A stretch of 64,000 bases of DNA from contig NIVC01001672.1 in the NCBI GenBank assembly GCA_002269645.1, positions 185,071 to 249,070 of the forward strand, written 5' to 3'. The translations under genes and the position numbers were made by a program. Shown piece after piece: positions 14,185-64,000 of the stretch; within the stretch, counting starts at the first letter, position 1; the number at the start of each line of letters is the position of its first letter. The notes beneath the pieces were generated by a model, which searched no databases, was not told the DNA's origin, and saw only the letters and a list, made by a program, of their open reading frames with translations. This stretch comes from Macrostomum lignano (Eukaryota).

Positions 14185-14304
14185 TCGGCAATGGAGTAAA
14201 AATGAAAGGCTTGAATTAAGCGGGCTGCGCCTAAGTGCTTGTTTCTCCTGCAGTTTGAGTTGTTTCACGCTGAGACATCTGGCCGCTCTGCTCAATTAGC
14301 CGTC

Positions 14305-44770: not shown

Positions 44771-45273
44771 ACGTGATAAGCCGCAGCTCTGTGACAACTA
44801 CATGTGTACATGTATTAGATTAATTTGGGTCGCATAGATGGTCAACTCCGCACCAACTTCCAAACAGTAATAAACTTTGCAGTTGATATTCCTGCCAGCT
44901 CTGGGATTGCATGGCTGGCATGACAGGTTGATAACTGTGTAGTGTTTACAGGACTTCAAAATGTTGACATGTTTCGGCTTAAACTCGATTGATAAGGGGT
45001 CTGTTGGCTGATTGATATTTTTGCTGACTGAGATGATTTATTAGCTCGTACTGGTAGTTGGAACTACAGAGCTTCATATCGTATCAGATTTCGAATGATT
45101 GTTGAAGTCCTACGGTCCTGAGCGAGTGTAATAAATTTCCGGGTATACGAGCATATATTGAGAGAATTGCTACCAAAGCCCCATGGCGACCACCCGGAAA
45201 TAATAAACGGCCTGGAGGGCTCGAGAACCCGGAGTCCCTGGTTCGATTTTGTGCGCGACCACATTCATATGGG

Positions 45274-46524
45274 CAGGGGCGTCGCCATGGATTTTACCGT
45301 AGGGGGGGGGGACAAAGTCAAGAATTCTACATAACATGAATAAATTATTATATGTACAATATATTTCGTGACCGGTGTCATCACTCATTTTGTCGCTGCA
45401 GACACTCATTTTAGCGCTGCAGACACTCATTTTGTCGCTGCAGACACTCATTTTGGCGCTGCAGACACTCATTTTGGCGCTGCAGACACTCATTTTGTCG
45501 CTGCAGACACTCATTTTGGCGCTGCAGACACTCATTTTGTCGCTGCAGACACTCATTTTGTCGCTGCAGACACTCATTTTGTCGCTGCAGACACTCATTT
45601 TGTCGCTGCAGACACTCATTTTGTCGCTGCAGACACTCATTTTGGCGCTGCAGACACTCATTTTGTCGCTGCAGACACTCATTTTGTCGCTGCAGACACT
45701 CATTTTGGCGCTGCAGACACTCATTTTAGCGCTGCAGACACTCATTTTGTCGCTGCAGACACTCATTTTGTCGCTGCAGACACTCATTTTGGCGCTGCAG
45801 ACACTCATTTTAGCGCTGCAGACACTCATTTTGGCGCTGCAGACACTCATTTTGTCGCTGCAGACACTCATTTTGTCGCTGCAGACACTCATTTTGTCGC
45901 TGCAGACACTCATTTTGTCGCTGCAGACACTCATTTTGGCGCTGCAGACACTCATTTTGTCGCTGCAGACACTCATTTTGTCGCTGCAGACACTCATTTT
46001 GTCGCTGCAGACACTCATTTTGTCGCTGCAGACACTCATTTTGTCGCTGCAGACACTCATTTTGTCGCTGCAGACACTCATTTTGTCGCTGCAGACACTC
46101 ATTTTGTCGCTGCAGACACTCATTTTGGCGCTGCAGACACTCATTTTGTCGCTGCAGACACTCATTTTGTCGCTGCAGACACTCATTTTGGCGCTGCAGA
46201 CACTCATTTTAGCGCTGCAGACACTCATTTTGTCGCTGCAGACACTCATTTTGGCGCTGCAGACACTCATTTTGGCGCTGCAGACACTCATTTTGTCGCT
46301 GCAGACACAATTTTGGCGCTGCAGACACAATTTTGCCGCTGCAGACACTCATTTTAGCGCTGCAGACACAATTTTGGCGCCTAAGGCATTTTGACATCCT
46401 GAAGCAAAATTTCTGATTTTCACAACGGGTCAGTCACAAGGTGGGGTGGGTCAAGCATGGCGTCCCCCATAGCTTTTACTGGGGGGGGGCATTCCCCCCT
46501 GTCCCCCCGGTGGCGACGCCCCTG
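45274..46524. mobile_element. Non-autonomous hAT-type element carrying a 21-bp satellite
   Basis: Perfect 14-bp TIRs CAGGGGCGTCGCCA / TGGCGACGCCCCTG; 8-bp TSD CATATGGG / TATATGGG. Confidence 0.88.
45381..46380. repeat. 21-bp tandem array (CACTCATTTTGTCGCTGCAGA)
   Basis: About 47 copies inside the hAT element. Confidence 0.95.
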
Positions 46525-48120
46525 TATATGGGGCTTGGGAGCACGATAATTGGCCGGGTGGCTGTCGTACGATTCACTGCAGCCATGAGGGCCAACCCCA
46601 AGGCGCAGAGAGTGTTCATGCCAGACGATTGGGAAAGTCAGTGCCGTTGTTGTACACCCTGTTTGAGCATAACATGAGCGCTTGCAGGTCCATCAAAGGA
46701 CCACTGGTAGTAAAAGGATGTTGAAAATTTAGAAAAAATGGATTTGAAGGCCCCGTTTCATTTTTATAAAAATGATTCATTCATGTAAATTTAGCAATTT
46801 CAAATAAAAGAGCAAACTATTGAAGTCGGGAAGCGATGTCAGTTGGCTCGTGATGTCGAGAGCGAGAAGAGAAGACGAAATTAGTAGCTGTATATCAAAT
46901 GTATATGAGGGACCTCATGTAGGTGCATAAAAAACAAAGGTGAAAATAAGTGTGCAGGGCGAATCCAAGTAACAATGATTGCCAGTCAGCAAATAACGTA
47001 TCCGTGTGTGTTGCTCAGAACGGAGGGCCACTTCCAGTCTCTACATCTCCGTCTCTCTCTCCTGTCTCCTATTCCTCTCTCCCTCTATCGAACCCTTTAT
47101 CTCACTCTGCTTCTGAAGCCTGCAGTTCTGCCCGAATTCAGTTGTCCTTTACAAAAGTTGTTTACAGCGCAGAAAATTCCAGAATGTATTGCTGCTCGGA
47201 TCTCTATAAACATAGTAGTTTCAGTCTCTACCCTACCGTCTGCGATCCAGCTACTCACCAGTGTGTATGCATTATTTTTCTTTTCATTCTGTCTAGCTGT
47301 ATCTGCTGGAAGAAAATACCGAAAAAACGTGACTCGAGCCTCACGTGTGCGCTCGGGACCACTTGCTGAGTGGGAGGGGGGCTCTTATTGTCCAGATGCG
47401 ATGCAGCAGGGGTTTACAGAGGCAATAAGATTTAGACAGAATTCTAGCACAATAGAATAGAGACTGGCCTATTGCATAGCCTGGCGGCTCTTATCGCTGC
47501 TGCACGTTTCTGATGGACCCCGTGCGAGACTCACCCGATTCGAGGGACCCGTGCCGATCCCCCCGCAGTGGCTGTATGGTTGCCGTGGTCTCACCCTACC
47601 TATCATGGTTTTCAGTGCTGCATAAATAAAGGCTAGCCATAGCTCTAAGCAGCGAGTCGACTTGACCTTCTCTCAGTCTGTTTTCGGTTCAAGCAAATAA
47701 CTATAATTTTTGACAAAGAGAAGATTTTCACTGCTCCCTGCTTTATTGCAACGTCATGAGGCTGGGCGGCATCGCTGTGAGTCAAAGGGGATCTCATTGG
47801 ATTTGCCCCATACTTCATGCTCCCTTCATTTCCCATCAACCCGAACCACATGGCTACTTCTCTTTGAGTTCGAGCACAGAGGACGACACAGAGACACTTC
47901 TAGATGCGGCCTCTAGCTTTGAAATTGTAGCCAACTTGTACCCTAACACCTGCAGCCTAAGTCCAATACCTAACAGTACCGCCTGCTGAGTGAATTCAGT
48001 ATCATTTAGAGTGGCTTAGTCGGTGGCATTATCTGGGAGGAGATTGCTTAATTAACCTATCATTTATTAATGCATTGGGTATATAGTGGCGCGAGCCTCA
48101 GAAAAATTCAAAATTCAGAT

Positions 48121-51100
48121 ACATGGGGCTGCCAACCTCAGAGATATGGGGGCGCCAACCTCTCAGAGATATGGGAGCGCCAACCTCAGAGATATGGGAG
48201 CGCCAACCTCAGAGATATGGGGGCGCCAACCTCTCAGAGATATGGGAGCGCCAACCTCAGAGATATGGGGGTGCCAACCTCAGAGATATGGGGAGCGCCA
48301 ACCTCAAAGATATGGGGGTGCCAACCTCAGAGATATGGGGAGCGCCAACCTCAGAGATATGGGGGTGCCAACCTCAGAGATATGGGGAGCGCCAACCTCA
48401 GAGATATGGGGGTGCCAACCTCAGAGATATGGGGAGCGCCAACCTCAAAGATATGGGGGTGCCAACCTCAGAGATATGGGAGCGCCAACCTCAGAGATAT
48501 GGCAGCGCCAACCTCAGAGATATGGCAGCGCCAACCTCAGAGATATGGGAGCGCCAACCTCAGAGATATGGCAGCGCCAACCTCAGAGATATGGGAGCGC
48601 CAACCTCAGAGATATGGCAGCGCCAACCTCAGAGATATGGGAGCGCCAACCTCAGAGATATGGCAGCGCCAACCTCAGAGATATGGGAGCGCCAACCTCA
48701 GAGATATGGCAGCGCCAACCTCAGAGATATGGGAGCGCCAACCTCAGAGATATGGGAGTGCCAACCTCAGAGATATGGGGAGCGCCAACCTAGATATATG
48801 GGAGCGCCAACCTCAGAGATATGGGAGCGCCAGCCTCAGAGATATGGGAGCGCCAACCTCAGAGATATGGGGGCGCCAACCTCAGAGATATGGGGGCGCC
48901 AACCTCAGTGATATGGGAGCGCCAACCTCAGAGATATGGCAGCGCCAACCTCAGAGATATGGCAGCGCCAACCTCAGTGATATGGGAGCGCCAACCTCAG
49001 AGACATGGCAGCGCCAACCTCAGAGATATGGGGGTGCCAACCTCAGTGATATGGGGGTGCCAACCTCAGAGATATGGGAGTGCCAACCTCAGAGATATGG
49101 GAGCGCCAACCTCAGAGATATCTGAGCACCAGCCCCAGAGATATGGGCGCGCTAACCTCAGAGATATGTGAGCACCAGCCCCAGAGATATGGGCGCGCTA
49201 ACCTCAGAGATATGGGGGTGCCAACCTCAGAGATATGGGGGCGCCAACCTCAGAGATATGGGGAGCGCCAACCTCAGAGATATGGCAGCGCCAACCTCAG
49301 AGATATGTGAGCACCAGCCTCAGAGATATGGGAGCGCCAACCTCAGAGATATGGGGAGCGCCAACCTCAGAGATATGGGGGTGCCAACCTCAGAGATATG
49401 GGAGTGCCAACCTCAGAGATATGGGAGTGCCAACCTCAGAGATATGGCAGCGCCAACCTCAGTGATATGGGAGCGCCAACCTCAGAGATATGGGGGCGCC
49501 AACCTCAGTGATATGGGGGTGCCAACCTCAGAGATATGGGGGTGCCAACCTCAGAGATATGGGAGCGCCAACCTAGATATATGGGAGCGCCAACCTCAGA
49601 GATATGTGAGCACCAACCTCAGAGATATGGGAACGCCAAGCTCAGAGATATGGGGAGCGCCAACCTCAGAGATATGGGCGCGCCAACCTCAGTGATATGG
49701 GAGTGCCAACCTCAGAGATATGGGAGCGCCAACCTCAGTGATATGGGAGCGCCAAACTCAGAGATATGGTGAGCGCCAACCTCAGAGATATGGGGGTGCC
49801 AACTTCAGAGATATGTGAGCACCAGCCTCAGAGATATGGCAGCGCCAACCTCAGAGATATGGGGGCGCCAACCCCAGAGATATGGGGAGTGCCAACCTAG
49901 ATATATGGGAGCGCCAACCTCAGAGATATGGGGAGCGCCAACCTCAGAGATATGGGGGTGCCAACCTCAGAGATATGGGGAGCGCCAACCTCAGAGATAT
50001 GGGGGTGCCAACCTCAGAGATATGTGAGCACCAGCCTCAGAGATATGGGAGCGCCAACCTCAGAGATATGGGAGCGCCAACCTCAGAGATATGGGGGTGC
50101 CAACCTCAGAGATATGGGAGTGCCAACCTCAGAGATATGGGAGCGCCAACCTCAGAGATATGGCAGCGCCAACCTCAGTGATATGGGAGCGCCAACCTCA
50201 GAGATATGGGGAGTGCCAACCTCAGTGAAATGGGAGCGCCAACCTTAGAGATATGGGTAGTGCCAACCTCAGAGATATGGGAGCGCCAACCTTAGAGATA
50301 TGGCAGCGCCAACCTCAGTGATATGGGAGCGCCAACCTCAAAGATATGGGGAGTGCCAACCTCAGAGATATGGGAGCGCCAACCTCAGTGATATGGGAGC
50401 GCCAACCTCAGAGATATGGGGGCGCCAACCTCAGAGATATGGGGGTGCCAACCTCAGAGATATGGGAGCGCCAACCTCAGAGATATGGGGGTGCCAACCT
50501 CAGAGATATGGGGAGCGCCAACCTAGATATATGGCAGCGCCAACCTCAGAGATATGGGAGCGCCAACCTCAGAGATATGGGAGCGCCAACCTCAGTGATA
50601 TGGGGGTGCCAACCTCAGAGATATGGGGGTGCCAACCTCAGAGATATGGGAGCGCCAACCTCAGAGATATGGGAGCGCCAACCTCAGAGATATGGGAGCG
50701 CCAGCCTCAGAGATATGGGAGCGCCAACCTCAGAGATATGGGAGCGCCAACCTCAGAGATATGGGGGTGCCAACCTCAGAGATATGGGGGTGCCAACCTC
50801 AGAGATATGGGGAGCGCCAACCTAGATATATGGGAGCGCTAACCTCAGAGATATGGGAGCGCCAGCCTCAGAGATATGGGAGCGCCAACCTCAGAGATAT
50901 GGGGGTGCCAACCTCAGAGATATGGGGAGCGCCAACCTAGATATATGGCAGCGCCAACCTCAGAGATATGGGGGTGCCAACCTCAGAGATATGGGAGCGC
51001 CAACCTCAGAGATATGGGGGTGCCAACCTCAGAGATATGGGAGTGCCAACCTCAGAGATATGGGGGTGCCAACCTCAGAGATATGGGGAGCGCCAACCTC

Positions 51101-51412
51101 AGAGATATGGGGGTGCCAACCTCAGAGATATGGGGGTGCCAACCTCAGAGATATGGGAGCGCCAACCTCAGAGATATGGGAGCGCCAGCCTCAGTGATAT
51201 GGGGGTGCCAACCTCAGAGATATGGGAGCGCCAACCTCAGAGATATGGGGGTGCCAACCTCAGAGATATGGGGAGCGCCAACCTAGATATATGGGAGCGC
51301 CAACCTCAGAGATATGGGAGCGCCAACCTCAGAGATATGGGAGCGCCAACCTCAGAGATATGGGAGCGCCAACCTAGATATATGGGAGCGCCAACCTCAG
51401 AGATATTGGGAG
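48121..51412. repeat. 23/24-bp tandem array (ATGGGAGCGCCAACCTCAGAGAT)
   Basis: About 3.3 kb, about 140 copies, ending about 60 bp before the signal-peptide coding sequence. Confidence 0.95.
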
Positions 51413-51474
51413 CCAGCTAGGAATCAAACTCAAGGACTCAAAGCTCAAAGCTGTTGTCTCGGTCACTCCCTCAG

Positions 51475-51680
51475 CCGCTGTATGCGACGGCAGTCCTCCT
51501 CCTGATAGTGGCGTTGGCGCCCACCGCGACGGCCAAGCGCGAGACGAAGACCTACACAGTCAACACCGGTGACGGGCCGGTCACGGTGACAGAGACTCAC
51601 GTGTCCGAGACCTCTTCGTCCTCGTCTTCACCGTCCGAATACAGCAGCAGCTCGGAGGTGGTTGAAACCAGCGGCTGGAG
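51475..51680 (+). CDS. Giant secreted vWA / cationic-aromatic repeat protein, exon A (signal peptide and Ser/Thr-rich N-terminus); start uncertain
   Basis: PLYATAVLLLIVALAPTATA|KRETKTYTVNTGDG...ETSGW AG|gtaaga. No in-frame ATG after the TAG at 51418-20; in-frame acceptor ctccctcag| at 51474. Confidence 0.7.
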
Positions 51681-51864
51681 GTAAGATCGGCCTATTAATT
51701 CTAGAAGGACGTTTTAATGTCAAATGCGAATTTCGCAAATAAAGTGCAAATTTCGTTGGAAGCCGGTTCCTGTTTAGTCTGGTTTTTCTCTACCGAATAT
51801 GTCTATGGTCAAACCCCATTCAGCGCCTTTAAAATGCAACGGTATTTTCAGCGTTACTATTTTT

Positions 51865-52087
51865 TATTGCCTTAATGGGCAGATGCCCGGCGCATCTCTG
51901 AAGGCTGCGTACGGCTGTTCAGTCCAAGGACTGGGGGGTCGCCACACAGCCTCAATTACCCCAGCTAATGCTGGCACCCATTTTACAGCTGGGTGAACTG
52001 AAGCAATGCAGGGTTAAGTGTCTTGCTTGAGGACACAAATTGTTCTCAGTGGGTTGAGAATCGAACTCCTGACCTTTCAGTCGTGAC
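51865..52087 (-). mobile_element. tRNA-derived CORE-SINE, copy 2
   Basis: Same family as 15600-15838; MIR-core-like stretch at 51977-52036. Confidence 0.8.
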
Positions 52088-52373
52088 AGTAATTTTAATT
52101 TTTCCTTAATAATTTTCCCGCCATAGTTTTTTCTCAAATTTTTCTCGGATACAAAATAGTGCATCAAACTAATACGACAGAAAAGCTTGCTCGAGTTTTA
52201 ATTCGATAGTCCAGAAGGAGAAACATTGGGAGTTCAGTGCTAAAAAACTGAAACTCCCCATCTTGCCAATGCATATTTTGTAGCGAACTCTGCCCTATTT
52301 GACATTGTAGCGTCCTTCTACTTGAGTTTTCTCTCTTTAAAAAACCCATCGATCATTGCCCCCCCCCCCCCAG

Positions 52374-52596
52374 CTCGAGCGCCAAGGAGCTGCTGAAGGA
52401 TTCGAAGGTCAGCGACATGTCCGCTGGGGACCTAAGCGGCAGTCTGGTGCTGGCAATCGACAAAAACGCCATCTCCAAAGGTCTGAAAAAGTACATCATG
52501 GACGCTTTGAAGAAGCTACCGGTGAAGACCAAGAAGATTAAAATTGGCTTCGTGGAGTACACGGATCGTCCTTATACGATTGTGTCGCTGAAGCAG
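52374..52596 (+). CDS. Exon B: N-terminal half of a vWA-like domain
   Basis: ccccag|C TCG AGC matches phase. SLVLAIDKNAISKGLKKYIMDALKKLPVKTKKIKIGFVEYTDRPYTIVSLKQ|gtgagg follows the vWA beta1-alpha1-beta2 pattern. Confidence 0.75.
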
Positions 52597-52617
52597 GTGA
52601 GGACGGCTGAGATCCCG

Positions 52618-53365
52618 GCACCTGACCCTGACATCCACCCTGAACCTGGAACCTGACCGACACCCACCCTGAACCTGGCACCTGACCCTGACAACCATTC
52701 TGAACCCGGTACCTGACCTTGACAACCATTCTGAACCCGGTACCTGACCCTGACACCCTGTCCTGAACCCGGTACCTGACCCTGACACCCTGTCCTGAAC
52801 CCGGTACCTGACCCTGACACCCTGTCCTGAACCCGGTACCTGACCTTGACAACCATTCTGAACCCGGTACCTGACCCTGACACCCTGTCCTGAACCCGGT
52901 ACCTGACCCTGACAACCATTCTGAACCCGGTACTTGACGCTGACACCCTACCCTAAACCCGGTACCTGACCCTGACAACCATTCTGAACCCGGTACCTGA
53001 CCGAAACCCATTCTGAACCCGGTACCTGACCTTGACAACCATTCTGAACCCGGTACCTGACCTTGACAACCATTCTGAACCCGGTACCTGACATTGACAA
53101 CCATTCTGAACCCGGTACCTGACCTTGACAACCATTCTGAATCCGGTACCTGACCTTGACAACCATTCTGAACCCGGTACCTGACATTGACAACCATTCT
53201 GAACCCGGTACCTGACCTTGACAACCATTCTGAATCCGGTACCTGACCTTGACAACCATTCTGAACCCGGTACCTGACCGACACCCATTCTGAACCCGGT
53301 ACCTGACCTTGACACCCTACTCCAAACCTGGTAGCTGACCCTGACATCCTACTCCGAACCCGGTA
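52618..53365. repeat. 31-bp tandem array (GACAACCATTCTGAACCCGGTACCTGACCTT)
   Basis: Intronic; related to the reverse complement of the 53809-54583 array. Confidence 0.92.
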
Positions 53366-53538
53366 CTGGACCCAAAAACTTACATGAACTCTAACACACA
53401 GAAACCAATTAATCAGCATCAAATTCATGAATAGTGAGGTTTATAGACAGTCTTATAAGCTGTCCAGCAGCCCGATGTACTGCATGCAGCTGTACACCGC
53501 TGGCTAAGTGAAGCTCACTGATTCAAATCGCTCTCCAG

Positions 53539-53804
53539 GGCTGGTCGCTTGACCGGATCTTGGCCAGGCTCCAAATCGAGCTATCCAAGAGTCGCCACGC
53601 CAAGCGGAGCGGCAAAGTTTACGATTACGTCGGCATCCAGGCGGCCTACAACGAGTTGCAAAAGTTCGGCAAGTCCTCCGGACCGAGGATTGTCATGCTG
53701 CTGAGCTCCGGGCGGGACGCCAACACGGCCAAGACAGAGCAGTGGCGGCACAAACTCATGAAAGAGTGGATTAGCCTTTCCGAGATTGTTGTGGACTCGT
53801 CTTC
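53539..53804 (+). CDS. Exon C: C-terminal half of the vWA-like domain
   Basis: ctccag|GWSLDRILARL...GIQAAYNELQKFGKSSGPRIVMLLSSGRDAN...VVDSS TC|gtgagt. RIVMLLSSG corresponds to the vWA KVxILITDG strand. Confidence 0.75.
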
Positions 53805-53808
53805 GTGA

Positions 53809-54583
53809 GTACCGGGTTCAGGGTAGGGTGTCAGGGTCAGCTACCGGGTTCGGGGTAGGGTGTCAGGGTCAGCTACCGGGTTCGGGGTAGGGTGTCAGGG
53901 TCAGCTACCGGGTTCGGAGTAGGGTGTCAGGGTCAGCTACCGGGTTCGGGGTAGGGTGTCAGGGTCAGCTACCGGGTTCGGGGTAGGGTGTCAGGGTCAG
54001 CTACCGGGTTCGGAGTAGGGTGTCAGGGTCAGCTACCGGGTTCGGGGTAGGGTGTCAGGGTCAGCTACCGGGTTCGGGGTAGGATGTCAGGGTCAGGTAC
54101 CGGGTTCGGGGTAGGGTGGCAGGGTCAGCTACCGGGTTCGGGTAGGGTGGCAGGGTCAGCCACCGGGTTCGGGGTAGGGGTCAGGGTCAGCTACTGGGTT
54201 CGGGGTAGGGTGTCAGGGTCAGCTACCGGGTTTGGGGTAGGGTGTCAGGGTCAGCTACTGGGTTCGGGGTAGGGTGGCAGGGTCAGCTACCGGGTTCGGG
54301 TAGGGTGTCAGGGTCAGCTACCGGGTTCGGGGTAGGGGTCAGGGTCAGCTACCGGGTTCGGGTAGGGTGTCAGGGTCAGCTACCGGGTTCGGAGTAGGGT
54401 GTCAGGGTCAGCTACCGGGTTCGGGGTAGGGTGTCAGGGTCAGCTACCGGGTTCGGGGTAGGGTGTCAGGGTCAGCTACCGGGTTCGGGGTAGGGTGTCA
54501 GGGTCAGCTACCGGGTTCGGGGTAGGGTGTCAGGGTCAGCTACCGGGTTCGGGGTAGGGTGGCAGGGTCAGCTACCGGGTTCG
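53809..54583. repeat. 32-bp G-rich tandem array (CAGGGTCAGCTACCGGGTTCGGGGTAGGGTGT)
   Basis: About 24 copies, intronic. Confidence 0.95.
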
Positions 54584-55016
54584 GATTTTCGCTGTGTTCG
54601 AGCAAACATGAAATGAAACGTTTCCCTGAATTTTGTTTCTACAAACGGTAATTTTTAAACTGGTAGTGATCGATGACGTCAAGTTATTCAACTATTCCTT
54701 CAGACAGAATGTAGATTTTTTCTGCACTAAAATTTCTGAGTATTTCCTATTTACCAAAATCGATTTTTTCTCGGCCCATCGGAAATCAAAGGGATGATGT
54801 AAAATTTTATTCAAAATTCCGAATTTAAAATTCCAATTCCAACCTTATGCGCATGAGGGGGGCTGTGGGCACCGCAGTCAAGGTCAATTCTAAAGGGTGC
54901 CTGCTATCACGCTAAGCACACGCTCTCAAAGGCTGCACACAAGGACTGCTTAAGCACAATTCCAATTCCCCTATCCGAGATCCAGATTACTGTGGCCGCA
55001 CATGAAACCTTTTTAG

Positions 55017-55111
55017 GGGCATCTTCAACGTGAAAGAAGGCGGCAAGGAGACATCCACGGACAAAACCTTGGAGCACACGACATTCCTGACTACCCTGCT
55101 TAAGTCGTACA
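55017..55111 (+). CDS. Exon D (linker)
   Basis: tttttag|G GGC ATC...GIFNVKEGGKETSTDKTLEHTTFLTTLLKSY A|gtaagg. It is the candidate I found that joins the phase-2 donor at 53804 to the phase-1 acceptor at 55195. Confidence 0.7.
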
Positions 55112-55194
55112 GTAAGGATATAAGCATTTATTTGCTGTTCAATAATGCCTACATGTGCTGTCAGCAAATAAAAATCCAATATTGATCTCTTTAG

Positions 55195-58100
55195 GCCACT
55201 CAACTATCCAGTACTACAAGAAGATCTATGGCGAAGCGTGGGAGTTCTACATAGTCCTCAAGCACTACAAGACTCTTTACCCCGGCAGCTGGCAGACGCA
55301 TTTGAAGACCTGGTTTACCAATAAATATGGCGACTCTACCAAGTTCGAGACCTACTTGCACCGGACCGAGAGCAAGACTGGCTCCCCGGTTTCTCCGGAA
55401 GACAGAATGCGAGCTACTTTCAAGAAGAAGTTCGGCTCAGCTTGGGAGAAGCACTTCCTAATTTGGAAGTACAAGAAGCTCTACGGTTTGAAGTGGAAAA
55501 TCCACTACGAGCAGCATTTGATGAAGAAGAAGTACGGCAAGGACTGGTTCTCGGAATGGGAGAAGTTGCGATTTAAGAAGAAATACGGGAAGAAGTGGGA
55601 GCCCCACTATGTGAAGTGGTATTTCAGGAAATACCGAGGGGCCACCTGGATTTACAGCTGGAAGAAGTGGCAGTTTAGACAAAAGCACAAAGAGGGCAGC
55701 AAGGCGTACGTTGACGAGTTCATGAGGTGGTACTTCAAGTACACTAAAAAGGGTGACAAAGCGCTTGAGGCGTGGAAATCCGCTACCAAAGACCTGTCTG
55801 AGGACGAAGGCGAGAAGAAGTTCCGCTGGTTTTACTACAATTTAGTATTCCAGAAAAAGCAGGCACTGATCAAATACACCAAGTGGTTCTACAGGAAGCG
55901 GTTCGGCAAAAAGTTCCTACCAAAGTACAAGTTGTGGCTGAACAGGTTTAATACAAACAAGCACTGGATGAAATATTACAAACTGATGGAAACGCAACTA
56001 GCCTACACTACTACCAGTTCTGTGACTGTTCATGTACACAGCATTCGCTGGTTTAAAAAGAAGTTCGGTTCGAAGTGGAGAACGCACTACGAGAAATATC
56101 AAATGAAGAAAAAATACGGCAAAAACTGGTTCTCCGAGTGGGAGAAGTTGCCATTCAAGAAAAAGTACGGCAAGAAATGGGAGCCGCACTATGTAAAGTG
56201 GTATTTTAAAAAATACCGACCTACGACTTGGATTTACAGCTGGATGAAATGGAAGATCAAGCAAAAGCATAAGGAAGGAAGCCAGGCCTATGTTAATGAG
56301 TTTATGCGATGGTACTTCCGGTACAAAAAGGCAGGAAGCAGTGCTTTATCAGAGTGGAAAGCTTTAAACAAGGATCTGTCGGCTGACAAGAAGGAAATGA
56401 TGTTCCGCTGGTTTTACTATAACCTAGTCTTCAAAAAGAAGAAAGCTCTGATAAAGTACACGAAATGGCACTACAGAAAAATATACGGAAAAACGTTTCT
56501 AACGAAGTTCAAGGAATGGGAAAAGAAAATCAACTCTGGTAAAGCCTGGATTCCGTTATACCAAAAAACTAACCATCAACTCCAATACCAGGTCGAGTGC
56601 GGGAGGGGAAACCACATGTTAAAACTGCAACCTGGTACAAGAGACACTACGGTCACAAGTGGCGCTGGTACTACACCCGAGTGGTCTACCGTCGACGCTA
56701 CGGTCGCAAGTGGCGCGTGCACTTTAGGAAGTGGCTGAAGCGAGTGTGGAAGAAGCCGTCACCGAAGCGTCGCGTCCTGCACAAGGTCACCTGGTACAAG
56801 AGACACTACGGTCGCAAGTGGCGCTGGTACTACACCCGAGTGGTCTACCGTCGACGCTACGGTCGCAAGTGGCGCGTGCACTTTAGGAAGTGGCTGAAGC
56901 GAGTGTGGAAGAAGCCGTCACCGAAGCGTCGCGTCCTGCACAAGGTCACCTGGTACAAGAGACACTACGGTCGCAAGTGGCGCTGGTACTACACCCGAGT
57001 GGTCTACCGTCGACGCTACGGTCGCAAGTGGCGCGTGCACTTTAGGAAGTGGCTGAAGCGAGTGTGGAAGAAGCCGTCACCGAAGCGTCGCGTCCTGCAC
57101 AAGGTCACCTGGTACAAGAGACACTACGGTCGCAAGTGGCGCTGGTACTACACCCGAGTGGTCTACCGTCGACGCTACGGTCGCAAGTGGCGCGTGCACT
57201 TTAGGAAGTGGCTGAAGCGAGTGTGGAAGAAGCCGTCACCGAAGCGTCGCGTCCTGCACAAGGTCACCTGGTACAAGAGACACTACGGTCGCAAGTGGCG
57301 CTGGTACTACACCCGAGTGGTCTACCGTCGACGCTACGGTCGCAAGTGGCGCGTGCACTTTAGGAAGTGGCTGAAGCGAGTGTGGAAGAAGCCGTCACCG
57401 AAGCGTCGCGTCCTGCACAAGGTCACCTGGTACAAGAGACACTACGGTCGCAAGTGGCGCTGGTACTACACCCGAGTGGTCTACCGTCGACGCTACGGTC
57501 GCAAGTGGCGCGTGCACTTTAGGAAGTGGCTGAAGCGAGTGTGGAAGAAGCCGTCACCGAAGCGTCGCGTCCTGCACAAGGTCACCTGGTACAAGAGACA
57601 CTACGGTCGCAAGTGGCGCTGGTACTACACCCGAGTGGTCTACCGTCGACGCTACGGTCGCAAGTGGCGCGTGCACTTTAGGAAGTGGCTGAAGCGAGTG
57701 TGGAAGAAGCCGTCACCGAAGCGTCGCGTCCTGCACAAGGTCACCTGGTACAAGAGACACTACGGTCGCAAGTGGCGCTGGTACTACACCCGAGTGGTCT
57801 ACCGTCGACGCTACGGTCGCAAGTGGCGCGTGCACTTTAGGAAGTGGCTGAAGCGAGTGTGGAAGAAGCCGTCACCGAAGCGTCGCGTCCTGCACAAGGT
57901 CACCTGGTACAAGAGACACTACGGTCGCAAGTGGCGCTGGTACTACACCCGAGTGGTCTACCGTCGACGCTACGGTCGCAAGTGGCGCGTGCACTTTAGG
58001 AAGTGGCTGAAGCGAGTGTGGAAGAAGCCGTCACCGAAGCGTCGCGTCCTGCACAAGGTCACCTGGTACAAGAGACACTACGGTCGCAAGTGGCGCTGGT

Positions 58101-61100
58101 ACTACACCCGAGTGGTCTACCGTCGACGCTACGGTCGCAAGTGGCGCGTGCACTTTAGGAAGTGGCTGAAGCGAGTGTGGAAGAAGCCGTCACCGAAGCG
58201 TCGCGTCCTGCACAAGGTCACCTGGTACAAGAGACACTACGGTCGCAAGTGGCGCTGGTACTACACCCGAGTGGTCTACCGTCGACGCTACGGTCGCAAG
58301 TGGCGCGTGCACTTTAGGAAGTGGCTGAAGCGAGTGTGGAAGAAGCCGTCACCGAAGCGTCGCGTCCTGCACAAGGTCACCTGGTACAAGAGACACTACG
58401 GTCGCAAGTGGCGCTGGTACTACACCGAGTGGTCTACCGTCGACGCTACGGTCGCAAGTGGCGCGTGCACTTTAGGAAGTGGCTGAAGCGAGTGTGGAAG
58501 AAGCCGTCACCGAAGCGTCGCGTCCTGCACAAGGTCACCTGGTACAAGAGACACTACGGTCGCAAGTGGCGCTGGTACTACACCCGAGTGGTCTACCGTC
58601 GACGCTACGGTCGCAAGTGGCGCGTGCACTTTAGGAAGTGGCTGAAGCGAGTGTGGAAGAAGCCGTCACCGAAGCGTCGCGTCCTGCACAAGGTCACCTG
58701 GTACAAGAGACACTACGGTCGCAAGTGGCGCTGGTACTACACCCGAGTGGTCTACCGTCGACGCTACGGTCGCAAGTGGCGCGTGCACTTTAGGAAGTGG
58801 CTGAAGAGAGTGTGGAAGAAGCCGTCACCGAAGCGTCGCGTCCTGCACAAGGTCACCTGGTACAAGAGACACTACGGTCGCAAGTGGCGCTGGTACTACA
58901 CCGAGTGGTCTACCATCGACGCTACGGTCGCAAGTGGCGCGTGCACTTTAGGAAGTGGCTGAAGCGAGTGTGGAAGAAGCCGTCACCGAAGCGTCGCGTC
59001 CTGCACAAGGTCACCTGGTACAAGAGACACTACGGTCGCAAGTGGCGCTGGTACTACACCGAGTGGTCTACCGTCGACGCTACGGTCGCAAGTGGCGCGT
59101 GCACTTTAGGAAGTGGCTGAAGCGAGTGTGGAAGAAGCCGTCACCGAAGCGTCGCGTCCTGCACAAGGTCACCTGGTACAAGAGACACTACGGTCGCAAG
59201 TGGCGCTGGTACTACACCCGAGTGGTCTACCGTCGACGCTACGGTCGCAAGTGGCGCGTGCACTTTAGGAAGTGGCTGAAGCGAGTGTGGAAGAAGCCGT
59301 CACCGAAGCGTCGCGTCCTGCACAAGGTCACCTGGTACAAGAGACACTACGGTCGCAAGTGGCGCTGGTACTACACCCGAGTGGTCTACCGTCGACGCTA
59401 CGGTCGCAAGTGGCGCGTGCACTTTAGGAAGTGGCTGAAGCGAGTGTGGAAGAAGCCGTCACCGAAGCGTCGCGTCCTGCACAAGGTCACCTGGTACAAG
59501 AGACACTACGGTCGCAAGTGGCGCTGGTACTACACCCGAGTGGTCTACCGTCGACGCTACGGTCGCAAGTGGCGCGTGCACTTTAGGAAGTGGCTGAAGC
59601 GAGTGTGGAAGAAGCCGTCACCGAAGCGTCGCGTCCTGCACAAGGTCACCTGGTACAAGAGACACTACGGTCGCAAGTGGCGCTGGTACTACACCCGAGT
59701 GGTCTACCGTCGACGCTACGGTCGCAAGTGGCGCGTGCACTTTAGGAAGTGGCTGAAGAGAGTGTGGAAGAAGCCGTCACCGAAGCGTCGCGTCCTGCAC
59801 AAGGTCACCTGGTACAAGAGACACTACGGTCGCAAGTGGCGCTGGTACTACACCCGAGTGGTCTACCGTCGACGCTACGGTCGCAAGTGGCGCGTGCACT
59901 TTAGGAAGTGGCTGAAGAGAGTGTGGAAGAAGCCGTCACCGAAGCGTCGCGTCCTGCACAAGGTCACCTGGTACAAGAGACACTACGGTCGCAAGTGGCG
60001 CTGGTACTACACCCGAGTGGTCTACCGTCGACGCTACGGTCGCAAGTGGCGCGTGCACTTTAGGAAGTGGCTGAAGCGAGTGTGGAAGAAGCCGTCACCG
60101 AAGCGTCGCGTCCTGCACAAGGTCACCTGGTACAAGAGACACTACGGTCGCAAGTGGCGCTGGTACTACACCGAGTGGTCTACCGTCGACGCTACGGTCG
60201 CAAGTGGCGCGTGCACTTTAGGAAGTGGCTGAAGAGAGTGTGGAAGAAGCCGTCACCGAAGCGTCGCGTCCTGCACAAGGTCACCTGGTACAAGAGACAC
60301 TACGGTCGCAAGTGGCGCTGGTACTACACCCGAGTGGTCTACCGTCGACGCTACGGTCGCAAGTGGCGCGTGCACTTTAGGAAGTGGCTGAAGAGAGTGT
60401 GGAAGAAGCCGTCACCGAAGCGTCGCGTCCTGCACAAGGTCACCTGGTACAAGAGACACTACGGTCGCAAGTGGCGCTGGTACTACACCCGAGTGGTCTA
60501 CCGTCGACGCTACGGTCGCAAGTGGCGCGTGCACTTTAGGAAGTGGCTGAAGCGAGTGTGGAAGAAGCCGTCACCGAAGCGTCGCGTCCTGCACAAGGTC
60601 ACCTGGTACAAGAGACACTACGGTCGCAAGTGGCGCTGGTACTACACCCGAGTGGTCTACCGTCGACGCTACGGTCGCAAGTGGCGCGTGCACTTTAGGA
60701 AGTGGCTGAAGAGAGTGTGGAAGAAGCCGTCACCGAAGCGTCGCGTCCTGCACAAGGTCACCTGGTACAAGAGACACTACGGTCGCAAGTGGCGCTGGTA
60801 CTACACCCGAGTGGTCTACCGTCGACGCTACGGTCGCAAGTGGCGCGTGCACTTTAGGAAGTGGCTGAAGAGAGTGTGGAAGAAGCCGTCACCGAAGCGT
60901 CGCGTCCTGCACAAGGTCACCTGGTACAAGAGACACTACGGTCGCAAGTGGCGCTGGTACTACACCCGAGTGGTCTACCGTCGACGCTACGGTCGCAAGT
61001 GGCGCGTGCACTTTAGGAAGTGGCTGAAGAGAGTGTGGAAGAAGCCGTCACCGAAGCGTCGCGTCCTGCACAAGGTCACCTGGTACAAGAGACACTACGG

Positions 61101-64000
61101 TCGCAAGTGGCGCTGGTACTACACCCGAGTGGTCTACCGTCGACGCTACGGTCGCAAGTGGCGCGTGCACTTTAGGAAGTGGCTGAAGAGAGTGTGGAAG
61201 AAGCCGTCACCGAAGCGTCGCGTCCTGCACAAGGTCACCTGGTACAAGAGACACTACGGTCGCAAGTGGCGCTGGTACTACACCGAGTGGTCTACCGTCG
61301 ACGCTACGGTCGCAAGTGGCGCGTGCACTTTAGGAAGTGGCTGAAGCGAGTGTGGAAGAAGCCGTCACCGAAGCGTCGCGTCCTGCACAAGGTCACCTGG
61401 TACAAGAGACACTACGGTCGCAAGTGGCGCTGGTACTACACCCGAGTGGTCTACCGTCGACGCTACGGTCGCAAGTGGCGCGTGCACTTTAGGAAGTGGC
61501 TGAAGAGAGTGTGGAAGAAGCCGTCACCGAAGCGTCGCGTCCTGCACAAGGTCACCTGGTACAAGAGACACTACGGTCGCAAGTGGCGCTGGTACTACAC
61601 CCGAGTGGTCTACCGTCGACGCTACGGTCGCAAGTGGCGCGTGCACTTTAGGAAGTGGCTGAAGAGAGTGTGGAAGAAGCCGTCACCGAAGCGTCGCGTC
61701 CTGCACAAGGTCACCTGGTACAAGAGACACTACGGTCGCAAGTGGCGCTGGTACTACACCCGAGTGGTCTACCGTCGACGCTACGGTCGCAAGTGGCGCG
61801 TGCACTTTAGGAAGTGGCTGAAGAGAGTGTGGAAGAAGCCGTCACCGAAGCGTCGCGTCCTGCACAAGGTCACCTGGTACAAGAGACACTACGGTCGCAA
61901 GTGGCGCTGGTACTACACCCGAGTGGTCTACCGTCGACGCTACGGTCGCAAGTGGCGCGTGCACTTTAGGAAGTGGCTGAAGCGAGTGTGGAAGAAGCCG
62001 TCACCGAAGCGTCGCGTCCTGCACAAGGTCACCTGGTACAAGAGACACTACGGTCGCAAGTGGCGCTGGTACTACACCCGAGTGGTCTACCGTCGACGCT
62101 ACGGTCGCAAGTGGCGCGTGCACTTTAGGAAGTGGCTGAAGAGAGTGTGGAAGAAGCCGTCACCGAAGCGTCGCGTCCTGCACAAGGTCACCTGGTACAA
62201 GAGACACTACGGTCGCAAGTGGCGCTGGTACTACACCCGAGTGGTCTACCGTCGACGCTACGGTCGCAAGTGGCGCGTGCACTTTAGGAAGTGGCTGAAG
62301 CGAGTGTGGAAGAAGCCGTCACCGAAGCGTCGCGTCCTGCACAAGGTCACCTGGTACAAGAGACACTACGGTCGCAAGTGGCGCTGGTACTACACCCGAG
62401 TGGTCTACCGTCGACGCTACGGTCGCAAGTGGCGCGTGCACTTTAGGAAGTGGCTGAAGAGAGTGTGGAAGAAGCCGTCACCGAAGCGTCGCGTCCTGCA
62501 CAAGGTCACCTGGTACAAGAGACACTACGGTCGCAAGTGGCGCTGGTACTACACCCGAGTGGTCTACCATCGACGCTACGGTCGCAAGTGGCGCGTGCAC
62601 TTTAGGAAGTGGCTGAAGAGAGTGTGGAAGAAGCCGTCACCGAAGCGTCGCGTCCTGCACAAGGTCACCTGGTACAAGAGACACTACGGTCGCAAGTGGC
62701 GCTGGTACTACACCCGAGTGGTCTACCGTCGACGCTACGGTCGCAAGTGGCGCGTGCACTTTAGGAAGTGGCTGAAGCGAGTGTGGAAGAAGCCGTCACC
62801 GAAGCGTCGCGTCCTGCACAAGGTCACCTGGTACAAGAGACACTACGGTCGCAAGTGGCGCTGGTACTACACCCGAGTGGTCTACCGTCGACGCTACGGT
62901 CGCAAGTGGCGCGTGCACTTTAGGAAGTGGCTGAAGAGAGTGTGGAAGAAGCCGTCACCGAAGCGTCGCGTCCTGCACAAGGTTGGTTGGTTCAAGCGAC
63001 GTTATGGAACAAACTGGCGTTGGTACTACACTCGAGTTGTTTATCAGCATCGATTTGGTCGGAAGTGGAGGGTGCATTTTAAACTATGGGAAAAGCACAC
63101 GTGGAAGCGTCCGGCTCCAAAACGTCCGCACGTTATAGTGCACACTTTGAGATGGTTTAAAAAGCATTATCCTAAGAATTGGAGGTGGTATTACACTCGC
63201 TGGTTTATCATCGAAAATTTGGAATTAAATGGAGATCTCACTTCCGAAGGTGGGTGAAAACGGTCTGGAAGAAGCCGTCGCCGAAGCGTCGCGTCCTGCA
63301 CAAGGTCACCTGGTACAAGAGACACTACGGTCGCAAGTGGCGCTGGTACTACACCCGAGTGGTCTACCGTCGACGCTACGGTCGCAAGTGGCGCGTGCAC
63401 TTTAGGAAGTGGCTGAAGCGAGTGTGGAAGAAGCCGTCACCGAAGCGTCGCGTCCTGCACAAGGTCACCTGGTACAAGAGACACTACGGTCGCAAGTGGC
63501 GCTGGTACTACACCCGAGTGGTCTACCGTCGACGCTACGGTCGCAAGTGGCGCGTGCACTTTAAGGAAGTGGCTGAAGCGAGTGTGGAAGAAGCCGTCAC
63601 CGAAGCGTCGCGTCCTGCACAAGGTCACCTGGTACAAGAGACACTACGGTCGCAAGTGGCGCTGGTACTACACCCGAGTGGTCTACCGTCGACGCTACGG
63701 TCGCAAGTGCGCGCGTGCACTTTAGGAAGTGGCTGAAGCGAGTGTGAAGAAGCCGTCACCCGAAGCGTCGCGTCCTGCACAAGGTTGGTTGGTTCAAGCG
63801 ACGTTATGGAACAAACTGGCGTTGGTAGCTACACTCGAGTTGTTTGATCAGCATCGATTTGGTCGGAAGTGGAGGGTGCATTTTAAACTATGGGAAAAGC
63901 ACACGTGGAAGCGTCCGGCTCCAAAACGTCCGCACGTTATAGTGCACACTTTGAGATGGTTTAAAAAAGCATTATCCTAAGAATTGGAGGTGGTATTACA
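55195..64000 (+). CDS. Exon E: two Lys/Trp/Tyr-rich modules, then more than 40 copies of a 159-bp (53-aa) Arg/Lys/Trp/Tyr repeat; open at window end; several single-base frameshifts as assembled
   Basis: ctttag|GC CAC TCA. Non-repetitive stop-free frame to about 56600, then unit HKVTWYKRHYGRKWRWYYTRVVYRRRYGRKWRVHFRKWLKRVWKKPSPKRRVL. The common variant CGA/AGA is synonymous. Diverged units at 62980-63260 and 63783-64000 keep the protein motif despite many nucleotide changes. Confidence 0.8.

What the first reader, a model, noticed from the sequence alone, without database searches (positions are those of the whole stretch)
51475..64000. Giant secreted protein: vWA-like head plus more than 40 tandem 53-aa Arg/Lys/Trp/Tyr repeats (candidate cation-pi adhesive, coacervate or antimicrobial secretion)
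Seen: five phase-consistent exons join a signal peptide, a vWA-like domain and a giant exon, about 3200 aa so far and still open at 64000. Each 53-aa unit has 13 R, 9 K, 6 W, 6 Y, 3 H, 1 F and no D/E. Coding status is supported by a synonymous common variant and by diverged units that keep the W/Y/G/K pattern. Established: Arg plus Trp/Tyr richness typifies mussel foot protein Mfp-3 and Trp/Arg antimicrobial peptides; cation-pi contacts drive coacervation; Macrostomum adhesive protein Mlig-ap1 has K/R-rich repeats; vWA domains are common in invertebrate glues and matrices. Inference: a gland product (adhesive, rhabdite/mucus, eggshell or reproductive secretion) with an architecture I do not recognise.
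Basis: partly seen in the sequence, partly recalled or inferred. Interest (0 to 1): 0.92.

Follow-up and report, generated by a model that had tools for sequence, protein, structure and literature searches.

The report
Giant basic Trp-rich secreted repeat protein
This is a real gene of the flatworm Macrostomum lignano for a secreted protein of about 3,100-3,400 residues, with a vWA-like head and about 45-50 near-identical 53-residue Arg/Lys/Trp/Tyr repeats; public annotation leaves out the repeats, the function is untested, and in this window the frame is broken by 14 single-base indels that are probably assembly errors.

Summary
The window is Macrostomum lignano assembly Mlig_3_7, contig NIVC01001672.1. 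The gene is BOX15_Mlig034012g1, annotated as "hypothetical protein, partial".

One more exon upstream, at 47756-47776, supplies the ATG.

The claim of a single ORF "still open at 64000" is not literally true. Exon E carries 14 frame-breaking single-base indels in the window.

A sister copy on contig NIVC01002152.1 carries the same exon as one uninterrupted ORF of 2,862 codons. That gives a 3,133-aa protein of about 412 kDa with net charge about +1,080. Coding constraint is strong: pN about 0.2 against pS of 0.75 or more in diverged units and modules. So the giant protein is real. The public 958-aa model omits exactly 41 units.

Outside M. lignano, 1.84 billion representative proteins gave only weak vWA matches. 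The architecture differs from Mlig-ap1 and Mlig-ap2.

No expression or functional data exist. The most likely role, by inference only, is a gland-secreted polycationic, aromatic-rich matrix or glue component that binds polyanions. I rate it a new variant of a known kind, of moderate to high interest.

The parts
47756..47776 (+). Exon 0: start codon and the first 7 residues (MRLGGIA). The donor GTGAGT is at 47777.
   Evidence: Pattern search. Matches the N-terminus of GenBank proteins P0001 and P0007.
48115..51413 (.). 23-bp minisatellite filling most of intron 1 (47777-51474).
   Evidence: TRF. The sister copy L004 has only 163 bp of it.
51475..51680 (+). Exon 1: the rest of the signal peptide (PLYATAVLLLIVALAPTATA|KRE) and an acidic Ser/Thr/Glu-rich linker. 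It ends in phase 2.
   Evidence: Sequence read. Splice phase. Identical to P0001. The cleavage site is judged by eye with the -3/-1 rule, not by a predictor.
52374..52596 (+). Exon 2: N-terminal part of the vWA-like domain (DLSGSLVLAIDKN...KIGFVEYTDRPYTIVSLKQ).
52614..53373 (.). 31-bp minisatellite in intron 2. It is the reverse complement of the 32-bp array in intron 3.
   Evidence: TRF. Inverted repeats up to 228 nt, 80-89% complementary.
53539..53804 (+). Exon 3: central part of the vWA-like domain (...GPRIVMLLSSGRDAN...).
53810..54584 (.). 32-bp minisatellite in intron 3, the inverted partner of the array at 52614-53373.
55017..55111 (+). Exon 4: C-terminal part of the vWA-like region (GIFNVKEGGKETSTDKTLEHTTFLTTLLKSY).
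55195..56632 (+). Exon E, first part: about 479 residues of Lys/Tyr/Trp/Phe-rich modules. They include a tandem duplication of about 200 aa and are built from the same roughly 17-aa [KR][KR][YF]G-x-x-W motif as the 53-aa unit.
   Evidence: No stops in 465 codons against 24 and 18 in the other frames. The two duplicates are 66% identical, with pN 0.196, pS 0.91 and codon-position differences of 41/42/88. An HMM built from the units matches 13 places in this region. AF2 predicts it all-helical, with pLDDT 70-90 in part.
56604..56604 (+). Missing G in a G-run, which shifts the frame between the modules and the array in this copy only.
   Evidence: It is the only difference from copy L002 across about 1,520 aligned nt here. 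L002 and L004 read through in frame (...QYQVECGRGKPHVKTATWYKRHYG...).
56633..62828 (+). 39 homogenised 159-bp (53-aa) units. Five of them are 158 bp because CCC became CC at unit position 44 (window 58424, 58900, 59058, 60170, 61282).
62829..64000 (+). Distal array: [U, A, B], U, U, then [U, A, part of B]. A and B are diverged units. Eight more single-base indels fall here (63198, 63563, 63710, 63745, 63759, 63828, 63846, 63963). The window ends inside the gene.
   Evidence: The same U-A-B block is an intact 483 nt in L002 and in L004. The tail aligns to L003 4959-5952, and the stop codon there lies about 585 nt further on.

Best explanation
SHOWN
- This is a transcribed six-exon gene of Macrostomum lignano (BOX15_Mlig034012g1), known so far only from this species.
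- Its product reads, in order: a signal peptide; an acidic Ser/Thr-rich linker; one diverged vWA-like domain, probably without a working metal site; about 480 residues of Lys/Tyr/Trp/Phe-rich helical modules; about 45-50 near-identical 53-residue units (42% Arg+Lys, 23% Trp+Tyr, no acidic residues, +22 charge per unit); two degenerate terminal units; and a stop.
- An intact sister copy gives 3,133 aa, about 412 kDa and about +1,080 net charge.
- The array is kept uniform by concerted evolution. The diverged units show that the protein frame is under purifying selection.

STRONGLY SUPPORTED, NOT PROVEN
- The 14 frame breaks in the window copy are mostly uncorrected homopolymer errors. The assembly is PacBio CLR assembled with Canu and polished only with Pilon.

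INFERRED ONLY
- A gland cell secretes the protein as a polycationic, aromatic-rich scaffold.
- It must be packed with a polyanion, such as a sulfated or acidic glycan or an acidic protein.
- After release it forms or reinforces an extracellular material such as glue, cement, eggshell, rhabdite or mucus.
- Binding would be multivalent: electrostatic, cation-pi and pi-pi contacts, possibly with Tyr oxidation.
- The vWA head would serve to dock or multimerise the protein.
For: IDENTITY
- The spliced model is 100% identical to PAA61749.1/PAA65232.1.
- The window equals NIVC01001672.1.
- The annotation is RNA-seq guided.

INTACT ORF
- Sister copy L004 has exon E as 8,589 nt with a single terminal stop and no indels in 39 scanned units.
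- The full product is 3,133 aa.

CODING CONSTRAINT
- Unit U against B: pS 0.745, pN 0.181. Unit U against A: pS 0.78, pN 0.207.
- Module duplicates: pS 0.91, pN 0.196.
- Window against L004 unique CDS: 8 synonymous and 6 non-synonymous differences in 2,220 nt.

ASSEMBLY ERRORS
- Of the 8 deletions, 7 fall in G or C runs of two or more bases; the 6 insertions are in mixed contexts.
- One U-A-B block is 483, 482 or 481 nt in three places, with the deletions at different sites.
- The L002 copy of the LLGL ORF has four 1-bp deletions, three of them in C4 runs.
- The assembly was made with Canu and polished with Pilon only (PMC5730564).

SECRETION AND vWA
- The hydrophobic N-terminus reads ...LLLIVALAPTATA|KRE.

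HELICITY
- AF2 models each unit as one helix of about 50 residues, broken at PSP.
- The hydrophobic moment is 0.365 against 0.18+-0.09 for shuffles.

ANALOGY
- Flatworm cohesive proteins use polycationic repeats that bind anionic partners (PMC6410801; PMC9229212).
Against: - I found no expression site, secretion product or phenotype for this gene.
- Public transcript-based models contain at most two units (P0007), so an mRNA spanning the whole array has not been seen.
- All five array deletions in the homogenised part of the window copy sit at the same unit position. One is at the same unit index (11) in copy L002. That could mean a real frameshifted unit variant and a truncated product from this copy.
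- The signal peptide was judged by eye.
- The AF2 models are single-sequence and of low confidence (pTM 0.20-0.26).
- The vWA match is below Pfam's cut-off.
Confidence: 0.55

Rival explanations
1. The window's own copy, and perhaps L002, is a truncated allele or a young pseudogene. On this view the CCC-to-CC deletions are real unit variants spread by unequal exchange. Translation would stop at 58483 after about 11 units, giving about 1,370 aa. The full-length protein would then come only from the copy on NIVC01002152.1.
For: All five deletions in the 39 homogenised units are at unit position 44. L002 also has this deletion in unit 11. The sister copy L004, produced by the same pipeline, has no indels in 39 units.
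Against: - CCC is the only G/C run of three or more bases in the unit, so errors would be expected to pile up there.
- The deletion sits on three different unit backgrounds: plain, with G59A and with C109A.
- C-run deletions also break a conserved LLGL ORF in L002.
- Frame-disrupting indels are about as many as substitution-type variants among the near-identical units, which is unlike real decay.
- A shared deletion at unit 11 is expected by chance about 17% of the time.
- Pilon cannot polish multi-mapping repeats.
Confidence: 0.3
2. The protein is a polyprotein precursor of defensive Trp/Arg-rich peptides. On this view, about 50 copies of a 53-residue cationic amphipathic helix are released by cleavage at basic sites, for example PKRR|V in the linker. 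The peptides would act on microbial or prey membranes in mucus or rhabdite secretion.
For: - The Trp+Arg-rich, acid-free composition is the hallmark of Trp/Arg antimicrobial peptides (own knowledge: indolicidin, tritrpticin, lactoferricin).
- Each unit is predicted as one helix bounded by PSP.
- Amphipathicity is moderate, with only 3.6% of shuffles reaching the observed moment.
- Near-identical multi-copy precursors are typical where peptide dosage matters.
Against: - Basic residues are everywhere, so no distinct processing site stands out.
- The best 18-residue hydrophobic moment is not significant (7% of shuffles reach it).
- The vWA head and the 480-aa modules have no role in such a precursor.
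- No peptide evidence exists.
Confidence: 0.12
3. The protein is an eggshell or cement precursor hardened by quinone tanning. On this view Tyr (10%) is oxidised to DOPA/quinone and cross-linked to Lys (17%) and His (5%), as in trematode vitelline eggshell proteins. Expression would be in oocyte shell granules or cement glands.
For: The Tyr/Lys/His-rich basic composition. Tyr is frequently next to Lys or Arg (the YGRK, YKR and YRRR motifs). A tyrosinase is reported in flatworm adhesive glands (PMC9229212). Knowledge of fluke vitelline proteins vpB and vpC is my own.
Against: - There is no sequence similarity to any eggshell protein.
- Gly is low (4%), unlike fluke eggshell proteins.
- Trp at 10% has no known role in tanning.
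- No expression data exist.
Confidence: 0.15
4. The 159-bp array is non-coding satellite DNA whose open frame is fortuitous, and the gene ends before it.
For: - A 159-bp unit with one open frame out of six is not unlikely by chance.
- The public 'partial' model stops at 56510, before the array.
- The genome is rich in minisatellites.
Against: - Diverged units A and B, the terminal units and the modules keep the amino-acid pattern while synonymous sites are saturated.
- The array is in frame with the upstream modules and with a proper terminal stop in L004 and in P0007.
- The modules are made of the same motif as the units.
Confidence: 0.02

Closest known systems
Mlig-ap1 (M. lignano cohesive adhesion protein) and the GRK-repeat proteins Mile-ap3 and Tmed-ap3
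   Same: Same species or phylum. Secreted, several thousand residues long, with huge extremely basic repetitive regions that are thought to bind anionic partners (PMC6410801; PMC9229212).
   Different: Mlig-ap1 repeats are Gly/Arg/Lys low-complexity sequence (for example SRKPRRKNRKSRKP), with no Trp or Tyr in the one repeat peptide quoted. They flank a C-type lectin, vWD, C8, TIL and 17-EGF core that is rich in Cys. The protein here has a vWA (not vWD) head, a single Cys, 20% Trp+Tyr, 4% Gly, and predicted long helices. No sequence similarity was found.
Mussel foot proteins Mfp-3 and Mfp-5, and other Lys/Arg plus aromatic wet adhesives
   Same: Cationic residues are interleaved with aromatic ones. 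Cation-pi contacts, aromatic-Lys synergy and coacervation form a plausible shared physical principle (own knowledge; reviews located).
   Different: Mfps are 5-10 kDa, Gly/Asn-rich, disordered and dependent on DOPA. This protein is about 412 kDa, has 53-aa helical repeats, and has Trp as abundant as Tyr. There is no homology.
Trp/Arg-rich antimicrobial peptides and their multi-copy precursors
   Same: Trp+Arg richness, no acidic residues, and a helical amphipathic tendency.
   Different: Those peptides are 13-25 residues long and are released from small precursors. Here no processing sites can be singled out, and a vWA head is attached.
vWA-domain matrix proteins (collagen VI, matrilins, von Willebrand factor A domains)
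   Same: The N-terminal domain aligns with collagen VI-type vWA domains at 24% identity over 119 residues (BLASTP E=9e-7; PDB 9han_C E=9.4e-7). The link to extracellular matrix is shared.
   Different: There is a single, very diverged domain, below Pfam's gathering score. The conserved Thr and Asp of the metal site appear to be replaced. The rest of the protein is unrelated.

Membership tests
vWA domain (Pfam PF00092) | Match to the family profile at or above the curated gathering score | tested here: not met
   22.0 bits against a cut-off of 23.8, E=2e-4, residues 113-217 on profile positions 20-121 of 174.
vWA domain (Pfam PF00092) | Significant pairwise similarity to bona fide vWA domains | tested here: met
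   Collagen VI alpha-3 (9han_C) E=9.4e-7 and vWF A1 E about 0.04. Collagen-VI-like proteins give E=5e-5 and 4e-4 against 1.84e9 sequences. BLASTP gives 9e-7.
vWA domain (Pfam PF00092) | MIDAS metal site (DxSxS ... T ... D) | tested here: inconclusive
   A DLSGS string aligns with DGSGS only if a 5-residue gap is introduced. The later Thr and the Asp of 'TDG' align with non-conserved residues (SSG). The site is probably degenerate.
vWA domain (Pfam PF00092) | Rossmann-like alpha/beta fold | tested here: inconclusive
   The single-sequence AF2 model has pLDDT below 50 over most of residues 49-259. Foldseek found nothing with E <= 0.001.
Mlig-ap1-type flatworm cohesive protein | Gly/Arg/Lys low-complexity flanks around a C-lectin, vWD, C8, TIL and EGF core | tested here: not met
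   Pfam finds only the weak VWA match and nothing in the modules or repeats. The composition is W 9.9%, Y 10.1%, G 4.2%, with 1 Cys. The Mlig-ap1 architecture comes from PMC6410801.
Mlig-ap1-type flatworm cohesive protein | Expression in adhesive gland cells and a non-adhesive RNAi phenotype | not testable with these tools
   No expression data could be retrieved for Mlig034012, Mlig004350 or Mlig020758.
Non-coding satellite or minisatellite DNA | No constraint on any reading frame | tested here: not met
   pN 0.18-0.21 against pS 0.75-0.78 between units. An intact 8,589-nt ORF exists in L004.
Trp/Arg antimicrobial peptide precursor | Defined processing sites that release short amphipathic peptides with membrane activity | not testable with these tools
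   Only indirect evidence: one helix per unit and a moderate hydrophobic moment.

The most novel reading that the evidence does not exclude
The 53-residue Arg/Lys/Trp/Tyr helix may be a previously undescribed material-forming module. On this reading, a protein of about 412 kDa and about +1,080 charge condenses in seawater through cation-pi and pi-pi contacts, either alone (like-charge coacervation) or with a gland polyanion. It would be a third, unrecognised class of flatworm secretion protein (glue, cement or protective coat), distinct from the ap1 and ap2 system, with copy number tuned by rapid array turnover.
Probability: 0.2. Interest if true: 0.8.

Novelty: new variant of a known kind. 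Interest (0 to 1): 0.55.

Why it matters
The case shows that a 7-kb stretch treated as a tandem repeat is in fact three quarters of a protein of about 400 kDa. The public gene models are a 709-aa 'partial' and a 958-aa 'complete' entry, and they miss about 2,200-2,700 residues. Studies of M. lignano by expression, proteomics (especially tryptic) or RNAi will therefore have under-counted or overlooked this protein.

The protein itself is an extreme polycation with about 10% Trp and 10% Tyr and no relatives. It comes from an animal that is the main model for reversible underwater adhesion. If it proves to be a gland product, it adds a new sequence solution to wet adhesion, coacervation or surface defence, and it offers a simple repeat to copy in synthetic materials.

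It is also a clean example of concerted evolution with a GC3 shift inside a coding array.

Tried and rejected
- Sequence beyond 64000: the window's own contig is masked with N there (L001). I inferred the 3' end from L003 and L004 instead.
- Foldseek of the 709-aa AF2 model against the PDB gave no match with E <= 0.001. The model is too poor in the vWA part.
- Pfam found nothing for the modules or the repeats.
- Homologue searches found only M. lignano self-models plus weak vWA hits. These were two word-index searches and one exhaustive phmmer search. P0002 and P0004 are mis-predicted versions of the same gene, not paralogues.
- Searches for the gene IDs, or for unit peptides, found nothing in full texts or in the supplements of the genome paper, the adhesion paper, the three-species RNA-seq paper and the sex-limited evolution paper. 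The adhesion paper's held supplements do not contain the Mlig-ap1 sequence either. Non-identity with Mlig-ap1 and ap2 therefore rests on their published domain architecture, not on an alignment.
- I first considered a missing base after an out-of-frame ATG at 51482 as the start. I rejected this once the upstream exon was found.
- I considered in-array splicing using the AAG|GTCACC and TTTAG|G sites. I rejected it because it would break the frame. Also, the annotated 958-aa model omits exactly 6,525 nt, equal to 39 U + A + B, which is the signature of a collapsed repeat.
- A literature search on rhabdite histochemistry gave nothing usable.
- A search for a catalogued 159-bp satellite in M. lignano gave nothing.
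Full report
WHERE THE WINDOW COMES FROM

A protein search with my spliced model returned a 100% identical GenBank entry. It is [quoted passage not shown] (P0001, 709 aa; accessions PAA61749.1 and PAA65232.1). Its contig, NIVC01001672.1 of assembly GCA_002269645.1 (Mlig_3_7), matches window 37756-64000 base for base. The contig sequence beyond 64000 is masked in the copy I could fetch.

CHECKING THE OBSERVATION

Tandem Repeats Finder reports a 159-bp array of 45.0 copies at 56630-63785, with 96% matches and score 13326. The consensus unit translates in one frame only, to WYKRHYGRKWRWYYTRVVYRRRYGRKWRVHFRKWLKRVWKKPSPKRRVLHKVT. The frequent C>A variant at unit position 109 changes CGA to AGA and is synonymous.

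The exons are 51475-51680, 52374-52596, 53539-53804, 55017-55111 and 55195 onwards. All have GT-AG borders and matching phases, and they reproduce P0001 exactly.

Two points need correction.

- Exon 1 has no in-frame ATG. The start codon is in a further exon at 47756-47776 (MRLGGIA|GTGAGT). It is separated from exon 1 by a 3.7-kb intron that is mostly a 23-bp minisatellite.
- The array is not one open frame in the window. All three forward frames carry periodic stops, and the coding frame moves 14 times.

The frame breaks are as follows:
- a missing G at 56604;
- five CCC-to-CC deletions at unit position 44 (58424, 58900, 59058, 60170, 61282);
- a missing G at 63198;
- seven more single-base indels between 63563 and 63963.

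IS THE REGION CODING, AND ARE THE FRAME BREAKS REAL?

Four independent lines show that it is coding.

1. The non-repetitive first 1.4 kb of exon E has no stops in 465 codons, against 24 and 18 in the other two frames. Its two internal duplicates of about 200 aa are 66% identical. Differences at codon positions 1, 2 and 3 number 41, 42 and 88, with pN 0.196 and pS 0.91.

2. The diverged units A and B, embedded in the distal array, keep every Trp and the Y/F-G-x-x-W pattern. Their synonymous sites are saturated: pS 0.745-0.78 against pN 0.18-0.21.

3. An HMM built from the units matches 13 places in the upstream modules. The whole C-terminal region of about 2,860 residues is therefore built from one motif of about 17 residues.

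4. This line is decisive. The cluster of P0001 contains a third GenBank protein, PAA60436.1 (BOX15_Mlig004350g1, 958 aa). It lies on contig NIVC01002152.1 (L004), where the complete gene sits on one contig. There exon E is a single uninterrupted ORF of 8,589 nt. It holds 40 canonical units, then A, B and one more unit, then two degenerate terminal units and TAA. No indel occurs in 39 scanned units.

The conceptual product of that copy is 3,133 aa. The mature protein is about 412 kDa with net charge about +1,080. Its composition is R 19.4%, K 17.1%, Y 10.1%, W 9.9%, V 9.5% and H 5.2%, with a single Cys. The window copy and L004 differ at 14 of 2,220 unique coding positions, 8 synonymous and 6 non-synonymous.

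The annotated 958-aa model omits exactly 6,525 nt, which equals 39 U + A + B. This is what results when a short-read transcript with collapsed repeats is laid on the genome.

The annotation was built from RNA-seq with StringTie/TACO plus a de novo assembly. That may explain why the window's own model stops at 56510 as "partial".

For the frame breaks in the window copy, I favour assembly error (about 0.65-0.7), for these reasons:

- Across about 1,520 aligned nt spanning the modules, the window differs from the second copy L002 by a single G in a G-run and nothing else. L002 reads through in frame, as do L004 and P0007.
- The same U-A-B block is 483 nt (intact), 482 nt or 481 nt in three places. 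The single-base deletions are at different sites and the sequence is otherwise almost identical.
- In the conserved LLGL ORF, L002 has four 1-bp deletions relative to the window, three of them in C4 runs.
- CCC at unit position 44 is the only G/C run of three or more bases in the unit. The deletion there occurs on three different unit backgrounds.
- The assembly is PacBio CLR assembled with Canu 1.4 and polished only with Pilon from short reads. Short reads cannot be placed uniquely in a 7-kb array of identical units or in duplicated regions.

Against this view:

- All five deletions in the homogenised part of the window hit the same position.
- L002 has that deletion at the same unit index, 11. 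Chance alone would give such a coincidence about 17% of the time.

A real frameshifted unit variant, and hence a product of about 1,370 aa from this copy, therefore remains possible (about 0.3).

THE END OF THE GENE

A search with units U, A and B found one more model, P0003. It lies at the very start of contig NIVC01000087.1 (L003). That contig carries 39 units, then two terminal units, then TAA at 6534. The window tail 62988-64000 aligns to L003 4959-5952 at 96.9% identity. The window copy should therefore terminate about 585 nt beyond 64000, at roughly 3,400 codons after frame correction. This is an inference. No further domain follows the repeats.

THE PARTS OF THE PROTEIN

The N-terminus, MRLGGIAPLYATAVLLLIVALAPTATA|KRE, has the n-, h- and c-regions of a signal peptide, with Ala at positions -3 and -1. 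This was read by eye; no predictor was available.

An acidic Ser/Thr/Glu-rich stretch of about 60 residues follows.

The next roughly 170 residues are vWA-like:
- Pfam VWA gives E=2e-4 at 22.0 bits, just under the 23.8-bit gathering score.
- Collagen VI alpha-3 in the PDB gives E=9.4e-7, and vWF A1 gives about 0.04.
- Collagen-VI-like proteins are the only non-self hits among 1.84 billion representatives (E=5e-5 and 4e-4).
- The metal-site residues are not clearly conserved.

AlphaFold2 without an alignment models the modules as helices, with pLDDT 70-90 in part. It models each 53-aa unit as one helix of about 50 residues broken at K-K-P-S-P. Mean pLDDT is 67 and pTM is 0.20, so no tertiary packing can be trusted. 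The hydrophobic moment of that helix is 0.365, against 0.18+-0.09 for shuffles; 3.6% of shuffles reach it. This is a moderate amphipathic tendency and not decisive.

COMPARISON WITH WHAT IS KNOWN

According to the original paper, Mlig-ap1 has Lys/Arg regions (peptide SRKPRRKNRKSRKP) flanking a core of C-type lectin, vWD, C8, TIL and 17 EGF modules. Mlig-ap2 has vWD, TIL, LDL-receptor and TSP-1 domains, plus repeats of 255 and 221 aa (PMC6410801). Later work describes the flanks as Gly/Arg/Lys repeats (PMC9229212).

The present protein shares none of this architecture. It has 20% Trp+Tyr, 4% Gly and one Cys.

No homologue of the modules or repeats was found outside M. lignano. A caveat applies: other Macrostomum species are probably poorly represented in these protein libraries.

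No paper or held supplement mentions Mlig034012, Mlig004350 or Mlig020758.

HOW IT MOST LIKELY WORKS (INFERENCE)

A secreted chain carrying about +22 charge per 53 residues, with no acidic residues, cannot be stored or act without polyanionic partners. Binding to polyanions such as acidic or sulfated glycans, acidic proteins, or microbial or substrate surfaces is therefore close to unavoidable.

The regular interleaving of Arg/Lys with Trp/Tyr favours cation-pi and pi-pi contacts. These are known to drive condensation and wet cohesion in mussel-type systems (own knowledge; reviews located).

The high copy number of identical units fits a material or dosage role. A vWA head fits docking to matrix or multimerisation.

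I therefore put a gland-secreted polycationic matrix, glue or coat component first. A quinone-tanned eggshell or cement precursor, and a multi-copy precursor of Trp/Arg defensive peptides, are the main functional rivals. None of these can be separated without expression data.

VERDICT

The claim of a continuous ORF in this window is wrong as stated, and the function is open. The gene's existence is already recorded in public databases, but its true architecture is not. I rate it a new variant of a known kind (giant repetitive polycationic secretion proteins), with interest 0.55.

Noticed in passing
window 885-51413 (arrays at 1705-2774, 3263-5075, 5647-7061, 9384-10492, 12579-12844, 43367-44772, 45382-46380, 48115-51413): About 32% of the window is tandem repeat, or 21% without the coding 159-bp array. 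The minisatellites have periods of 16, 21, 23, 29, 31, 44 and 155 bp, and there is a perfect (CT)133. Array lengths differ strongly between gene copies: the 23-bp intron array is 3.3 kb here and 163 bp in L004.
   Followed up: partly
window 52614-53373 and 53810-54584: The 31-bp and 32-bp minisatellites in introns 2 and 3 are reverse complements of each other and bracket exon 3. The arms reach 228 nt at 80-89% complementarity. In the pre-mRNA they could pair and loop out exon 3, giving exon skipping or a circular RNA.
   Followed up: partly
window 56633-62828 compared with 62988-63310: GC3 is 0.81 in the homogenised units, against 0.49-0.59 in diverged units A and B and 0.67 in the modules. 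Arg codons shift towards CGC. This is consistent with GC-biased gene conversion acting during concerted evolution of the array.
   Followed up: no
L004 6001-18034 (NIVC01002152.1); GenBank PAA60436.1 / UniProt A0A267EG50: The public 'complete' 958-aa model of the sister gene omits exactly 6,525 nt (39 U + A + B) of an uninterrupted 8,589-nt exon. This is a collapsed-repeat annotation artefact that hides 2,175 residues.
   Followed up: yes
window 37812-40811 (+); L002 1-2910: This is a 999-codon ORF without introns that carries an LLGL (lethal giant larvae) domain (Pfam E=7e-21). Its copy on contig NIVC01002000.1 has four 1-bp deletions, three of them in C4 runs. These are either assembly errors or a decaying duplicate.
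   Followed up: partly
window 14239-15474 and 16566-17333 (+): Two ORFs match the amiloride-sensitive sodium channel family (ASC; E=6e-30 and 0.018). They are probably exons of one DEG/ENaC-type channel gene.
   Followed up: no
window 11053-12096 (+) and 19414-20022 (-): One ORF contains an RNase H match (E=2e-6) and is probably a retroelement remnant. The other is a UCH-type ubiquitin hydrolase-like ORF (E=7e-6) on the minus strand.
   Followed up: no
window 52360-52371: An uninterrupted run of 12 C lies two bases upstream of the AG acceptor of exon 2 (exon start 52374). This is an unusual polypyrimidine tract.
   Followed up: no
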